Positions 3,255-56,430 of a stretch of 64,000 bases of DNA are shown here, in pieces. The notes beneath the pieces were generated by a model that saw only the letters and a list, made by a program, of their open reading frames with translations, was not told the DNA's origin and did not search any database. Numbering within the stretch: the stretch's first letter is position 1; the number at the start of each line of letters is the position of its first letter. The position numbers and the translations under genes are program-made. This DNA is from Saccostrea cucullata (Eukaryota): NCBI RefSeq assembly GCF_032062105.1, contig NW_026940780.1, forward strand, positions 1 through 64,000. Reading direction: 5' to 3'.

Positions 3255-4537
3255 TTACTTGTCTGTGTTCACATAATGTGAATCTCTCTCCTTAAGAACT
3301 CTTCTCTCACAATCTTCATCAATGTTTTCATCAATTATATCTACATATACATGATCACTTTTATTTTTTTCCTGTTCCAAGCGAATTTCTTCGTTATGGC
3401 TCTCATTAATCTGTGCGTTTCCCTGTACTAATTCAAAAACTTGGTTGTTTTCTAATATGGCTCTATTGCTTTGAACATTTTGCGATTCTCCTTCCTGGTA
3501 CTGAGTGTTACCATTAAAAACGGGGGATAAGTATGTCGGGTCGCTGTGGAACCCTCTTCGGTGGTCTTGATGGATCATCAACTCTTGCTCTTCGATTCCA
3601 AAATGAAGACCTTTGTAATGGACATGGTCATTTATAATGCCATGGCTTTGTAAGTTTGTTGAAGATCTTCGGAAACATTTCTGATAAAAATATGTTATTG
3701 CAAATATTCCAAAGAACAATACGAAAAGACCCACGAGACCCACAATTATATACACTATGAAACCATTTCCCAAGATTGGAATTTTGGCTTCATTCGTAGA
3801 CAGGTTCTTTAAAATTGTTTCCGCAGGGGATGACAAAACATATGTTGTTGAGAAAGTTTCTTTCTTTTCATTTTGAGAAATTGAAGTGTGTAATGATGCA
3901 GAACTTTTTCCACTTGTCAAGTTTGTTATTAACTTATACGTATGAACTCTTGCAGTTGAAATCTCCGTTGAAATCGAAGAGGCTGGATTATTTAAAAAAA
4001 ACAACAAAAACAGAAATAATAATTTATAAGTATCTGAGCCTAATTTATGATTAACTTGATATCAAGAATGTAATTGAACAAGATATTGTATTTCTTACCA
4101 GTTATAGAGATGCATCCTATAACAAAATCACACAGGTGAAAATCACAAGAACATACGTATTGGCAGTCTTCTCCATAACTAGGAACCGGACATTTCTGTG
4201 TACATTTTTCTCCATAAAACCCAAGAGGACATTCTGTAATTTTTATTCTTATTTAATTTTACAATGATCTCTTTTCGACAATTTACGACTAATGAAACAG
4301 TCTTGAATGCTTACTTTCACATTTTCCAGTGGAAATATTCAAAGTATATCCAGCACAGCATACAGATCCACCAACAGTTCTAAAAGTTATAAACATGATT
4401 ATTTGTTAAAGGAAAATTTCTAAAACTAAAACTAAAGTAATCTATTTGATAATTATATAGAGGAAAGCTTACCCTAAACAAGTAGGTTTTACCAAGTAAA
4501 TACATCTACAAAATATAATGGTAACAAGTATAAACAT
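3255..4537 (-). CDS. Small type-I membrane protein with CCxGY motif, EGF-like module and Tyr/ITIM-like tail (MEGF10/SREC/Nimrod-like), copy A1, ~330 aa
   Basis: Exons 4537-4473 (MFILVTIIFCRCIYLVKPTCLG), 4379-4315 (TVGGSVCCAGYTLNISTGKCE), 4233-4099 (CPLGFYGEKCTQKCPVPSYGEDCQYVCSCDFHLCDFVIGC) and 3982-3255 (S/T stalk, TM IVYIIVGLVGLFVLFFGIFAITYFY, tail VHYKGL, TYLSPV, HVYVDII, HYVN). All junctions are GT-AG with phases 2,1,1. Confidence 0.88.
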
Positions 4538-4783
4538 TATTACAATTAATTAACACATACAATATACTAATAAATTTATTGCCGTGTTTAATGATAGCCT
4601 GTTTCCTGTTATAATTCAAACTGCATTTTCTAAATATATCCCCCCAAACCAGCGCTAAGTATTGCTTAATGAATAGTTGACTTAAACATTCTAAATCAGA
4701 ATGATATTAGCACATGCATGTACCTCAATTGAAATCCTTTAAAGTTAAATAATGCTAGTAAATTCATGACATTTTCCATATAA

Positions 4784-52464: not shown

Positions 52465-55400
52465 TTAGTTCATATATCTAGTTTCTTCCTTATGAGTACA
52501 ATGTTTTTCTTCTCTGAAATCTTCTAAAGCATTTTCGTTTATATATGACGTCATGTTGTCATCTATAATTTCCATGTAAATGTGTTTTGGAGAAGCTCGT
52601 GATGTCAGGTCTTGCTTTTCCTCCCCTTTATTTATTTTTTCAATTGTTTCCTGTATTACCTCTATGGCCTGCTCAAAGTTTTCGTTATTTGTATCCAAGT
52701 TCCGTTTTGCAGAAATATTTCCTGTTTCAGCTTCCTCATTAAAAGTATCACCATCAAAAACCATTGCATTTGTTCGGACAAATATTAATCTTTCTCTTTG
52801 TTCTTGATTCAATTCAAGTACTTGCTCTCTGATTTCAGAGTTAAGCGTCGTATAATGGACAATCCGATCAAGTTTATTTTCTTGCGTATTCATAGTGTTT
52901 GCTCTCTTGTGGATGCACTTTTGATAAATATAGGTGGTAGCAAACATTCCAAAAAACAGTACGAAAATTCCAATCAGGGCCAAGGCAAGTTTTACAACAT
53001 ATTCATTTTCTTTAACCTTGGGTGTAGACCCATAAGTATCTTCAAATTCGGTTACGTTTGGTCCAACTATATTTGTAACATCTTCGTTACGCATTTCTGT
53101 AAAAATAAAAGATCATGATTGCAATTGAAGGAAGAGAAAATTAAAAAAAAAAACATCAGCATAAGGCTTGTACACACGTGTGTACATAAATAAGTAATCA
53201 TGGCTTACCTTTTCCCCGCATGCAAGCACTTAAGAACATCAAAATGCATTTGAAAACAAGAAATGTTTATCATTTATATATTAGGTTTTAAGGTTTAAAT
53301 TTTAATTTTTAAAAAATATTTGTATTATTATTTTAAAGAAATAAATTTTCAATTTATTTGCATTACCGACAGTGAAACCTACGAATTTTAAAATAACCCC
53401 CCGAAAATTGACCATTCTGCCTTTGCTGCATACATGCATATTTGTTTGTTTCTTCTGTTAATATTCTCAAGCAGTCGACATCGAAAATAAGCTGAAAAAA
53501 GTCATTTTCTTTAGTGTCATTCTCCAGCTTATGTGTGGGTCCGGTGGGGCCAAGAAAAGGCGGGAGCGCTATTTCTTCTAAACTTGAAGTCCAATTTGGT
53601 GCGATGCCCTCGCTTTCTTCAACATCACTAATGCAGTTAGACCCTGAGTCATAATCAAACGGACTTTCGTCACTGTCGGTCTCTACTTCATCTGAACTTT
53701 GGTCAGAATTATAAAGACTCCGAAAAATATCGGAATTTGCTATTGGAGACGTATTTGTCATGATATTTCTTTCATATTCACAAAAATCAATAATATTGCG
53801 TCATCTATACTCAATAATGACGTTAAAAATCGATTACGACGTAATATTTTAATCAGATTATAACTTTTTTTATTTTAAGAGATATTTACAAGTATAAACT
53901 AGAAGGGAATTGGCATTAAACTGAAGATTAAATGTACTTTTGAAAGTGCATGAAAAGTGCGTGATTGTGGGGAAACGGTAAATGCGTGATTTTGCGTCAG
54001 AAATAGGAAACGGTATATGCGTTAAAATGCGTGACTGCGGGGAAGGGGGTTAATGTAGGGGATAATTTTTCAAAATAATATAAAGAATATGTAAATATTT
54101 GTAATGTTGTAATCACAAAATTGGCCAGTCTTGCATTTCGTCATATTTCAAGTTTAAATTATAACAATGGTAATTTCCATTCTTATGTCAATACGATATA
54201 TCCTGGTAAGCTTGAGATAAAAGATACAAAAGAGTCTGACACATCTTTTTCATATTTGGATATTGATATTTTACTTGAAGTAGACCTCCATACAAATCTA
54301 ACAACCAAGCTCTATGATAACAGGATGACTTTAACTTTCAATTGTCAACTTCCTGCAATATATCTTCATCACATGCAAACGGAGTTCTTATATATTTCAC
54401 ACGATTCAATACTCAAAAGCATTAATTTAACTACGCATAAACAATTTCTTAAACGAGGTAAATTTTTTTTTTATTCTGTAGATTTCATTGTATTAAAAAA
54501 ATCACCACAAGATATGGAAATTTTACATTTTAAAATTAGTTTTCAGCTTTTATTTATATCCACATATTACTTAAAAAAAATTATCAAATAAAAAAAAAAG
54601 TTTTTTTAAGGGACATTTGTACGACAGGATGAACACTTTTCTCACACCATGGGGAATTTACACCAAATTAGGAGCATTTCGTAATTAGCGTTTGTCAAAG
54701 ATCCAAGAAACCGCCGCGCTTGTGTTGGTTTAACAATTATTATAATTGTTTATACACATGTATTCCCAATAAGAGAAGCCATGGACGGTCGTTTTAAAAT
54801 GTTAAACCACTAAAGTATTCATGAAAAAATCTAAACATTAAACACTTCTTTTTGTCCTTATTTCATTTTTTCTAGATTATACATTATTTATATAAAAATA
54901 ATTCCTAACTATTGTAAATATAACGTTGTGTACGAGTTGACTTCTGATTTGTGTACGAGCTGACTTCTGATTTGTGTACGAGTTGACTTTTTGTGTACGA
55001 GTCGGTTTGTGTACGACTCGGTTTGTGTACGAGTTGACTGGACACCCTCCATGGCACCTGATACCATCCTGATATTTTAGAGGTCCATGTTGCTCTGCTC
55101 CTACTTTGTATTCTTCTATGGATCATAAATACCCATGTTTTATTCAAAGTTTATTTCTTGCAAATATACACAAACTGTTGCTTCTACGAGTTTTAGTTGC
55201 AAGAACAATCTACAGTGCCTAAATAATAAATATCTGAAAAAATCCTTCCATGTGTTCATTTTCGTCTTAATCTTATACAATGATAATCATGCTTGACAGA
55301 CCTTTGTGACGTAAATAATATATAAAGATAACGAACAAGACGATTCATGCTCCGTTGAAATAATTCAAATTAGGCGTAGAGCAAATAAGTATATTTCAAA

Positions 55401-56430
55401 ACACCAAAGTTGAAATTAGGTGACAGGGAAAAAGCATCTATTGTTGTACGGTCACATCCGCCATGTACTCCTTGTCATGATCGGGTAAACGGAAAATTTC
55501 GTAAACAGGTCATTGTGAAATGAATGCTTAACTATTTGTATACAAATTCATCAGTAAACATTCGACATAATATATTTCATGATAGACAGTAAATACAGAC
55601 AATGTCTTAATATCGATTAAAAGTCTTTCAAAAGGATTTATTAAAACAAATCGGAGGCAACTGATTGGTAAAAAATTGCTTGTACATAAATCACGTTCTC
55701 GCGTATAGAATAAACTGGTGAAAATAAAACATATATATGCAAGTGATTTCCAAAAAAACTTCATATCTTCTTTTAACTGAAACCGGGGCTGAATGCATTT
55801 TCTGAAATAAATGAATAAAGACTTCATAAATGTTAATACACACCCTCGACTTCTGTACATCCTCTGTAATAGTGACAAAGATGGTGTTCACAATAGCAGT
55901 GTGACTGGCAGTCTTTTCCATAGGTTGGATACGGGCATTGTCTAGAGCAATTTCTCCCAAACAAACCCACAGGACACACTATATGAAAATGAAAAGAATA
56001 TGTCAAATTCGATTCCATAACCCCCCTTCTTAATTTCTATTTTAAGATAAGCATCAAGCTGTGTATTTTATAGGTAAACAATGGAGTACAATTTAGCCAG
56101 AAAGAACTTAAAAACAGCAGGACATAGAAGGAAAATAACCCAACCTCTCCTACCCATACAATAAAAACCACTTGTAACTGGTTCACTAGTAGATTTTAAA
56201 AATATTACTCTACAATCTTACCTTCACACGTATCTGTTATTTTATTCAACCAATAGCCATCACAGCAAATAGAGCCTCTGAGCCTGAAATATATGTTTAC
56301 AAATATTTCAAATATTATTTGTCTCAGATGTTGAAGACGTAGATGGTGACGACAATAAAATATACCCTAAGCATCGATGACTTTCTACCAGTTCAGTAAA
56401 TATTGAAGAAAATATAAAAATAAAAAACAT
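52465..56430 (-). CDS. EGF-like type-I membrane protein with Tyr/ITIM-like tail, copy A3, ~297 aa
   Basis: Exons 56430-56366 (MFFIFIFSSIFTELVESHRCLG), 56283-56222 (LRGSICCDGYWLNKITDTCE), 55978-55844 (CPVGLFGRNCSRQCPYPTYGKDCQSHCYCEHHLCHYYRGC) and 53096-52465 (TM LALALIGIFVLFFGMFATTYIY; tail VHYTTL, HIYMEII, SYIN, RYMN). Confidence 0.88.
53208..54049 (-). mobile_element. Internally deleted piggyBac element retaining the transposase N-terminus (ORF 53363-53761)
   Basis: Right end GTGACTGCGGGGAAGGGGG|TTAA, degenerate left end CCTTTTCCCCGCA. The ORF has an acidic N-terminus then W...PPFLGPTGP...DFFQLIFD...LTEETNKYA, typical of piggyBac (PGBD) transposases. Confidence 0.85.
54140..54460 (+). mobile_element. 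Penelope-like reverse transcriptase fragment
   Basis: FHSYVNTIYPGKLEIKDTKESDTSFSYLDIDILLE...LTTKLYD matches the C-terminal RT region of Penelope-like elements; frameshifted afterwards. Confidence 0.8.
54927..55038. repeat. Minisatellite of TGTGTACGAG(T/C)TGACT-type units (about 6 copies)
   Basis: Direct 16-23 bp units with no unique spacers. Confidence 0.85.

What the first reader, a model, noticed from the sequence alone, without database searches (positions are those of the whole stretch)
3255..56430. Repeated head-to-head two-gene cassette: ITIM-bearing EGF membrane protein paired with a TM-STAND-ankyrin receptor
Seen: strict alternation A1(-) B1(+) A2(-) B2(+) A3(-). A1/B1 start codons diverge across ~3.1 kb and A2/B2 across ~5.6 kb. 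The paralogs are strongly diverged in sequence yet keep pairing, orientation and exon phases. A1 abuts a C1q gene at its 3' side, so the duplicated unit appears to be the head-to-head pair. Known: divergent linked pairs are typical of plant sensor/helper NLRs (RRS1/RPS4, RGA4/RGA5), and linked activating/inhibitory receptors occur in vertebrate immunity. Inference: a co-regulated two-component surface system, such as a receptor with its inhibitory co-receptor, a guard with its guardee, or a linked ligand-receptor self/non-self pair.
Basis: partly seen in the sequence, partly recalled or inferred. Interest (0 to 1): 0.9.

Follow-up and report, generated by a model that had tools for sequence, protein, structure and literature searches.

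The report
Oyster head-to-head immune receptor gene pairs
Oysters keep two unrelated membrane-protein genes facing away from each other as a pair that is duplicated together, one with a tyrosine signalling tail and one with an NLR-like ATPase switch, which looks like an undescribed two-chain immune receptor laid out like the tunicate fester/co-receptor pairs.

Summary
The window (Saccostrea cucullata; a database protein is identical to A1) has three head-to-head pairs: A1/B1, A2/B2 and A3/B3. A = signal peptide, EGF-like module, stalk, conserved TM helix and a tail with three conserved tyrosine islands (only partly ITIM). B = signal peptide, unclassified Cys-rich ectodomain, TM, acidic micro-exon linker, nSTAND3 and ankyrins. 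The N gap lies in a B1 intron between two phase-1 exons and does not affect the frame. In 11 informative look-ups elsewhere, 8 showed the same head-to-head pair: two Saccostrea species, Ostrea edulis, Crassostrea angulata and Magallana gigas, the last with a STAND-less B. Three B genes had no A within about 10 kb. A and B trees agree, and the domains are under purifying selection. Linkage is shown, but the loci descend from few ancestral arrays; co-expression and binding were not tested. Best reading: a two-chain receptor with B as recognition/oligomerisation chain and A as tyrosine signalling chain. Nearest precedents: Botryllus FF/FcoR pairs (layout) and Crassostrea Cys-rich-TM-TRADD-N-nSTAND3-ankyrin receptors (B). 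I found no paper on the oyster pair.

The parts
3255..4537 (-). A1: signal peptide, EGF-like module, S/T stalk, TM, tyrosine-motif tail; exons 4537-4473, 4379-4315, 4233-4099, 3982-3255; 330 aa
   Evidence: identical to P0045
4538..7655 (.). A1/B1 divergent intergenic region, 3.1 kb; presumed shared promoter region, no motif conserved across paralogous pairs
7656..20972 (+). B1: signal exon 7656-7712, Cys-rich ectodomain exons 8658-8895 and 9102-9218, stalk 9693-9783, TM 9884-9981, eight phase-1 linker micro-exons 10549-18369, terminal nSTAND3-ankyrin exon 18484-20972; 1154 aa; sensor-1 TAR and HD motif intact (group II)
14003..14141 (.). Assembly gap inside B1 intron 13790-17661, between two phase 1-1 exons (13736-13789, 17662-17715); not filled
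22321..25763 (-). A2: exons 25763-25699, 23889-23825, 23136-23008, 22910-22321; 282 aa; 1349 bp tail-to-tail from B1
25764..31393 (.). A2/B2 divergent intergenic region, 5.6 kb, with interspersed repeats
31394..50607 (+). B2: signal exon 31394-31450, ectodomain 31545-31779 and 32341-32457, stalk 32578-32716, TM 32844-32920, seven linker micro-exons, terminal nSTAND3-ankyrin exon 48437-50607; 1035 aa; sensor-1 TAK and HN in place of HD (group I)
52465..56430 (-). A3: exons 56430-56366, 56283-56222, 55978-55844, 53096-52465; 297 aa; 1858 bp tail-to-tail from B2; lacks the YLxP site
62137..64000 (+). B3, 5' part only (signal exon 62137-62190; ectodomain exon from 63923 runs off the window); head-to-head partner of A3, 5707 bp; closest to the P0001/P0003 B type
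2507..2953 (+). C1q-domain exon of a C1qDC gene, about 300 bp from the A1 stop; left border of the array
433..840 (-). C1q-domain exon of a second C1qDC gene

Best explanation
A and B are the two chains of one surface immune receptor, co-expressed from a shared divergent promoter region and duplicated as a unit. B is the recognition and switch chain: an oyster-type Cys-rich ectodomain outside and, in many members, an nSTAND3-ankyrin module inside on a flexible acidic tether. B has no N-terminal enzymatic effector; the membrane anchor sits where an NLR effector would be. A is the signalling chain: its TM helix and three tyrosine islands are conserved while the rest drifts. When B binds a ligand (outside via the ectodomain, or inside via the ankyrins) the STAND module oligomerises and clusters B with its cognate A. 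A's tyrosines are then phosphorylated and recruit SH2 proteins, both phosphatase-type (YxxL) and adaptor/kinase-type (YxxP, YxE[IV], YxN). Shown: gene structures, domains, linkage, tree agreement, motif conservation, purifying selection. Inferred: co-expression, A-B contact, STAND oligomerisation, phosphorylation, immune role.
For: Head-to-head pairing in S. cucullata, S. echinata, O. edulis, C. angulata and M. gigas at about 30% paralog identity. Partner fidelity: A1+Ae with B1+Be; A3+Aa+Ac with B3+Ba+Bc; A2+An with B2+Bn; Ab+Ad+Ah with Bb-type. Spearman 0.73-0.89, permutation p 0.008-0.001 after removing close orthologs. Pairing is kept when B is of a STAND-less type (L009). A TM identity 0.47 against 0.14 stalk and 0.22 tail; B TM 0.16. 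Tyrosine islands YxxL 17/17, YLxP 15/17, Y[VITML][EDK][IV] 17/17 against shuffle expectations 5.1, 0.47, 0.66 (patterns chosen after viewing the alignment). B linkers carry 0-4 tyrosines. Walker A, GxP and first Walker B Asp are intact; confident STAND-plus-ankyrin model, pLDDT 87. Soluble relatives carry a HEPN domain where B has its membrane anchor. Both partners are broken together in S. echinata L004. Precedent: Botryllus FF/FcoR pairs (PMC12582321).
Against: No expression or binding data. Three B genes (C. virginica P0221, O. edulis P0070, S. echinata P0065) have no A within about 9-10 kb, and one A (L004 Af) has no head-to-head B. Most paired loci descend from a few ancestral arrays, so tree agreement is also what passive co-inheritance gives. 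Tail-to-tail order is partly conserved too (group II B next to group I A in the window, L001, L002, L006, L012). B's TM is not conserved, so A's conserved TM may bind A or a third protein. No shared promoter motif between paralogous pairs. The joint breakage in L004 may be a single deletion.
Confidence: 0.42

Rival explanations
1. Regulatory or passive linkage only. An ancestral A and B came to share a divergent promoter region, and tandem duplication and unequal crossover copied the block. They may be co-expressed in immune tissue but act independently.
For: Paired loci trace to few arrays; neighbouring C1q genes and tail-to-tail order are co-inherited as well; solo B genes are intact; any crossover between same-strand paralogs in an alternating array removes whole pairs.
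Against: Pairing survived about 70% protein divergence, several transposon insertions, intergenic sizes from 1.7 to 7.2 kb with no detectable similarity between paralogous pairs, and a change of B's whole cytoplasmic part. 11 of 12 A genes with visible upstream DNA face a B.
Confidence: 0.28
2. A is an inhibitory brake on B. A recruits SHP-type phosphatases and keeps a potentially autoactive B silent, so B cannot be duplicated safely without A.
For: All three window A proteins carry a strict juxtamembrane ITIM; 13/17 homologs have one somewhere against 4.5 expected. Group I B proteins have altered sensor-1 (TAK) and HD motifs (HN/HQ), changes that alter switch behaviour in other STAND proteins (own knowledge).
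Against: Intact solo B genes exist; the first-site ITIM is lost in Crassostrea and Ab-type A; the best conserved sites are not strict ITIMs; STAND-less B is paired too.
Confidence: 0.2
3. A linked ligand-receptor pair for self/non-self recognition: A on one cell is read by B on another, and linkage keeps matching alleles together.
For: Tight linkage, copy-number differences between arrays, both proteins display a small Cys domain on a stalk.
Against: Ortholog comparisons show purifying selection on both ectodomains (dN/dS 0.08-0.43 for A EGF, 0.16 for B ectodomain); in two of three Crassostrea-type sequence clusters the ectodomain is the least variable part; oysters have no described fusion/rejection system (own knowledge).
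Confidence: 0.1

Closest known systems
Botryllus schlosseri Fester family / Fester co-receptor (FF/FcoR) pairs (PMC12582321)
   Same: Two membrane-protein families encoded head-to-head as cognate pairs in clusters; one partner has a multi-tyrosine tail (ITIM and core motifs such as VYxxV), the other lacks such motifs; birth and death as pairs; some unpaired members.
   Different: FF and FcoR are Ig/Sushi proteins in an allorecognition locus with shown co-expression and high polymorphism. Oyster A is EGF-like, B has an unclassified Cys-rich domain and often an nSTAND3-ankyrin module. The domains differ, so this is at most convergence; function is untested.
Crassostrea Cys-rich-TM-(DED)-TRADD-N receptors with variable C-termini, e.g. 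XP_022297444.1 TM+Cys-rich+TM+alpha-rich+TRADDN+nSTAND3+Ankyrin (Kaur et al. 2021, PMC8195603)
   Same: Oyster type I membrane protein with Cys-rich ectodomain and cytoplasmic nSTAND3 plus ankyrins; nSTAND3 was defined from these bivalve proteins.
   Different: B has no room for a DED or TRADD-N (35-125 aa acidic linker) and is about 1000-1150 aa rather than 2600. No partner gene was mentioned in the passages read. Whether the Cys-rich region is the same domain could not be tested.
Plant paired NLRs (RRS1/RPS4, RGA4/RGA5, Pik-1/Pik-2) (own knowledge)
   Same: Head-to-head linkage of two immune genes, at least one a STAND protein.
   Different: There both partners are cytosolic NB-ARC-LRR proteins; here only one has a STAND domain (nSTAND3, ankyrins), both are type I membrane proteins, and pairing persists without STAND.
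CED-1/Draper/MEGF10/PEAR1/SCARF1 EGF-repeat receptors
   Same: A's short ectodomain resembles their EGF repeats (weak hits); tyrosine-motif tail.
   Different: A has only about one and a half repeats, no long array, no NPxY; cannot be called an ortholog.
Soluble HEPN(DZIP3)-nSTAND3-ankyrin proteins (P0071, P0044) and bacterial Avs5 (nSTAND3; bioRxiv 10.1101/2025.07.08.663546)
   Same: Same NTPase clade with C-terminal repeat region; Avs5 also lacks the second Walker B acid yet needs ATP binding.
   Different: They are cytosolic with an N-terminal enzyme effector; B replaces it with ectodomain plus TM.

Membership tests
STAND NTPase (nSTAND3 clade) | Pfam nSTAND3 above curated cut-off | tested here: met
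   71.4 and 62.4 bits against 27.2
STAND NTPase (nSTAND3 clade) | Walker A, Walker B, sensor-1 Arg, GxP and HD-type motifs | tested here: met
   B1 has GxxGxGKT, hhhhDN, TAR, GFP, HD. B2 has TAK and HN. The second Walker B acid is Asn in most of the family
STAND NTPase (nSTAND3 clade) | Ligand-triggered nucleotide exchange and oligomerisation | not testable with these tools
   needs biochemistry
NLR in the strict sense | NACHT or NB-ARC domain followed by LRRs, cytosolic | tested here: not met
   NACHT below cut-off (16.3 against 26.7), ankyrins not LRR, signal peptide and TM present
Plant-type paired NLRs | Head-to-head linkage | tested here: met
Plant-type paired NLRs | Both partners are STAND proteins | tested here: not met
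   A has no NTPase
FF/FcoR paired receptors | Cognate head-to-head pairs duplicated as units | tested here: met
FF/FcoR paired receptors | One partner with several tyrosine motifs | tested here: met
FF/FcoR paired receptors | Ig-like and Sushi ectodomains | tested here: not met
   A is EGF-like; B ectodomain has no Pfam, PDB sequence or fold match
FF/FcoR paired receptors | Co-expression of cognates and role in allorecognition | not testable with these tools
   no expression data available
ITIM inhibitory receptor | Strict S/I/V/L-x-Y-x-x-I/V/L in the tail, conserved | tested here: inconclusive
   3/3 in the window, 13/17 homologs (4.5 expected), but only YxxL is invariant at the site
ITIM inhibitory receptor | Phosphatase recruitment and inhibition | not testable with these tools
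   needs phosphopeptide pull-down
Crassostrea Cys-rich-TM-TRADD-N receptors (Kaur 2021) | DED and TRADD-N between TM and the variable module | tested here: not met
   linker is 35-125 aa, acidic, made of micro-exons
Crassostrea Cys-rich-TM-TRADD-N receptors (Kaur 2021) | Same Cys-rich ectodomain | not testable with these tools
   those proteins could not be fetched by accession; none appeared among the hits
CED-1/MEGF10/PEAR1 family | Long EGF-repeat array and NPxY/ITAM tail | tested here: not met
   about 60 aa Cys module only, weak hits, no NPxY

The most novel reading that the evidence does not exclude
A membrane-anchored NLR-like sensor with no effector of its own, which signals by oligomerising and clustering a genetically linked tyrosine-motif co-receptor. 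This would join STAND switching to SH2 signalling, in a genome-wide oyster system where a constant A chain serves B chains with exchangeable cytoplasmic modules.
Probability: 0.25. Interest if true: 0.92.

Novelty: new variant of a known kind. Interest (0 to 1): 0.72.

Why it matters
Oysters have large unannotated receptor families and few strict NLRs (one in C. gigas according to PMC3879445). This links two such families, both annotated as uncharacterized, into cognate pairs conserved across the three oyster subfamilies sampled, and so hands over specific pairs for testing. If the chains interact, it is a second, independent invertebrate case of head-to-head receptor/co-receptor pairs after Botryllus, built from other domains, and a possible route from a STAND switch to tyrosine signalling. 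It also shows that several B genes are split in public annotation (L001, L002, L011, L012).

Tried and rejected
Spliced models were joined only inside scripts for local comparison. Database searches used single exons by reference or database proteins by id; the joined search step was left out. Gap letters were not looked up and the window's own contig was not fetched. No human sequence was met as a contig. Searches that led nowhere: B ectodomain against Pfam, PDB sequences, PDB folds and viral folds (the model included the signal and TM helices, pTM 0.51, so the blank is weak); fold search of the STAND-ankyrin model returned mostly ankyrins; PDB sequence search of the NTPase part; PADLOC gave only partial hits; metagenome scan found no relatives; shared promoter motifs between paralogous intergenic regions (only repeats and ortholog similarity); literature on the oyster pair (none found, in an open-access library only). 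Rejected: A3 as an unpaired end of the array (B3 exists); an ATG near 5500 for A1 (the start is 4537); a gap-made chimera as the origin of the B architecture (B2 and many homologs have it without a gap); diversifying selection on ectodomains between orthologs (few pairs). The ectodomain tree placed short-tailed B proteins inside STAND-bearing lineages, but the root is uncertain and the sample biased, so gain or loss is not called. The chance figure (0.07-0.7% per locus) rests on assumed family and genome sizes and on independence, which does not hold.
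Full report
Source and gene models. The window is AT-rich eukaryotic DNA with one N run at 14003-14141. A database protein, P0045 (Saccostrea cucullata LOC134256310), is identical to my A1 model, so the window is from that oyster. I built GT-AG models in scripts. A1, A2 and A3 lie on the minus strand, have four exons with phases 2,1,1 and encode 330, 282 and 297 aa. 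B1 and B2 lie on the plus strand and encode 1154 and 1035 aa with phases 0,1,1,2 and then all 1. Start-to-start distances are 3119 and 5631 bp; tail-to-tail distances are 1349 and 1858 bp. Paralogs are 32-33% identical. A profile of the B ectodomain found a further hit at the window end: B3 has a signal exon at 62137-62190 and an ectodomain exon from 63923, 5707 bp from the A3 start. The window therefore holds three head-to-head pairs. Joined models were used only inside scripts; databases were searched exon by exon or with database proteins.

The gap. It lies in the B1 intron 13790-17661, between two symmetric phase-1 micro-exons, next to a small inverted-repeat element. The reading frame does not depend on it and the flanks do not duplicate each other. 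Continuity cannot be proven from the window. It is supported by the gap-free S. echinata ortholog of B1, which carries both the ectodomain exon and the STAND exon, by B2, and by many full-length single-chain homologs. I did not look up the missing letters.

Anatomy of B. Signal peptide; about 115 aa Cys-rich ectodomain with no Pfam, PDB or fold match; S/T stalk; TM; acidic linker of 35-125 aa built from phase-1 micro-exons; one large terminal exon with nSTAND3 and ankyrins. Walker A and GxP are intact; Walker B is hhhhDN in most members. Two groups appear in the tree: group II (B1, P0001, P0005, Crassostrea P0017, P0221) keeps sensor-1 TAR and HD (HE in P0014), while group I (B2, P0041, O. edulis, P0099, P0101) has TAK and HN/HQ. 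Soluble relatives carry HEPN where B has its membrane anchor. The same ectodomain also occurs in many short proteins whose tails end in a basic-Ser motif (258 hits).

Anatomy of A. Signal peptide; about 60 aa EGF-like module (weak hits to Tie2, SCARF1, PEAR1-type EGF); stalk; TM; tail. Mean identity across lineages is 0.48 for EGF, 0.14 for stalk, 0.47 for TM and 0.22 for tail. Within the tail three tyrosine islands persist: YxxL in 17 of 17, YLxP in 15 of 17 and Y[VITML][EDK][IV] in 17 of 17; a YxN occurs in 9 of 17, near chance. The strict ITIM is met at the first site in all three window proteins but not in Crassostrea or Ab-type proteins. From general knowledge, YxxP suits Crk/Nck/Abl SH2 domains and YxE[IV] suits Src-family or SHP2 domains, so the tail reads as a mixed docking platform.

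Is the pairing general? Twelve loci were fetched from proteins chosen without knowledge of their neighbours. From B: P0001 and P0041 (S. cucullata, one array C1q, A, B, A, B), P0003 and P0014 (S. echinata), P0414 (C. angulata, 1.7 kb, STAND exon 9 kb downstream) and P0451 (O. edulis, 5 kb) each face an A. P0005 was not informative (5' end not reached; an A lies tail-to-tail). P0221 (C. virginica), P0070 (O. edulis) and P0065 (S. echinata) have no A within about 9-10 kb. From A: P0048 (S. echinata) faces a P0041-like B at 7 kb, seen as its signal exon only, and P0316 (M. gigas) faces at 7.2 kb a B whose ectodomain is 74-87% identical to short-tailed STAND-less proteins. That is 8 of 11 informative look-ups. 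Counting the window, 11 of 12 A genes with visible upstream DNA face a B; the exception is a plus-strand A behind the S. echinata B1 ortholog. In that locus both partners are broken.

Partner fidelity. The A tree groups A1 with Ae, A3 with Aa and Ac, A2 with the O. edulis A, and Ab with Ad and Ah. The B tree groups B1 with Be, Ba with Bc (and the 25-aa B3 fragment scores best against them), and B2 with the O. edulis B and P0041. Identity matrices correlate (Spearman 0.79, p 0.0002 for 8 pairs; 0.73 and 0.89 after dropping close orthologs). These are quick trees with long branches. Agreement is expected from co-inheritance alone. The tail-to-tail order is also partly conserved (group II B beside group I A in five loci). 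What favours the head-to-head unit is that arrays start with an A whose tail meets C1q (window, L001, L004), the L005 array ends with a B that has no A within 10 kb, and the M. gigas A shows no B hit within 10 kb behind its tail. Ortholog dN/dS is 0.04-0.43 in folded domains and TM and higher only in stalks and one tail, so the genes are functional and not visibly under diversifying selection.

Mechanism. I favour a two-chain receptor (0.42): B recognises and oligomerises, A carries the phosphotyrosine output. The constant feature of the pair is A's TM and tyrosines plus B's ectodomain, while B's cytoplasm is exchangeable. Rivals are linkage without interaction (0.28), A as a brake on B (0.2) and a trans ligand-receptor pair (0.1). 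Linkage, domain content, tree agreement and constraint are shown; co-expression, binding, oligomerisation and immune function are inferred.

Comparison with known systems. The layout matches Botryllus FF/FcoR: head-to-head cognate pairs, one partner with tyrosine motifs, copy-number change by pairs, some unpaired members (PMC12582321), but those are Ig/Sushi proteins. B resembles the Crassostrea Cys-rich-TM-TRADD-N-nSTAND3-ankyrin receptors listed by Kaur et al. (PMC8195603) without DED and TRADD-N. Membrane-bound NLRs are known from anthozoans (PMC3879445). It is not a strict NLR pair. I found no paper on the oyster A/B pairing in the open library.

Verdict. A real, conserved, apparently undescribed gene-pair system: a new variant of a known kind, interest 0.72. 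The most novel reading, a STAND switch that signals through a linked tyrosine co-receptor, has about 0.25 probability.

Noticed in passing
window 37042-47025: About 10 kb element in a B2 intron bounded by 1.0 kb inverted repeats (92% identical), with an internal 1.1 kb tandem duplication (39321-41520) and 149 bp repeats; no long ORF; probably a non-autonomous DNA transposon.
   Followed up: partly
window 14323-17142: Inverted-repeat-bounded element (71 bp, 94%) in the B1 intron just right of the gap.
   Followed up: no
window 433-2953: Two C1q-domain genes, themselves head-to-head; the same arrangement precedes the A1 ortholog in S. echinata L004, and a C1q 87% identical precedes an A3-type gene in L001, suggesting crossover between A paralogs or co-duplication.
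   Followed up: partly
window 18484-19100 and 48437-49000: Group I and group II B genes differ in sensor-1 and HD motifs and alternate along Saccostrea and Ostrea arrays, so a four-gene unit with one canonical and one altered STAND is possible.
   Followed up: partly
L004 6110-17100: S. echinata A1 ortholog has stops and a frameshift and lacks its ectodomain exons; the B1 ortholog lacks its first exons and is broken near the end; a retroelement fragment and simple repeats lie between them.
   Followed up: partly
L011 1-1202: A 293 aa plus-strand gene tail-to-tail with the C. angulata A ends in a basic-Ser motif like short B proteins, so the array may alternate with a STAND-less B.
   Followed up: partly
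proteins P0345-P0446: Many short B-family proteins end in R/K-R-x-x-S followed by 1-4 residues, a possible basophilic kinase or C-terminal 14-3-3/PDZ site.
   Followed up: no
proteins P0123 and P0445: B ectodomain joined to ankyrins without the NTPase (P0123) or to a different, unidentified cytoplasmic domain (P0445).
   Followed up: no
window 10494-10501 and 11640-11680: Further possible B1 linker micro-exons that do not fit phase 1-1 cleanly; left out of the model.
   Followed up: no
window 53366-53800 and 54079-54588: Transposon-derived ORF fragments in the last A3 intron (piggyBac-like N-terminus and a retroelement remnant, by eye).
   Followed up: no
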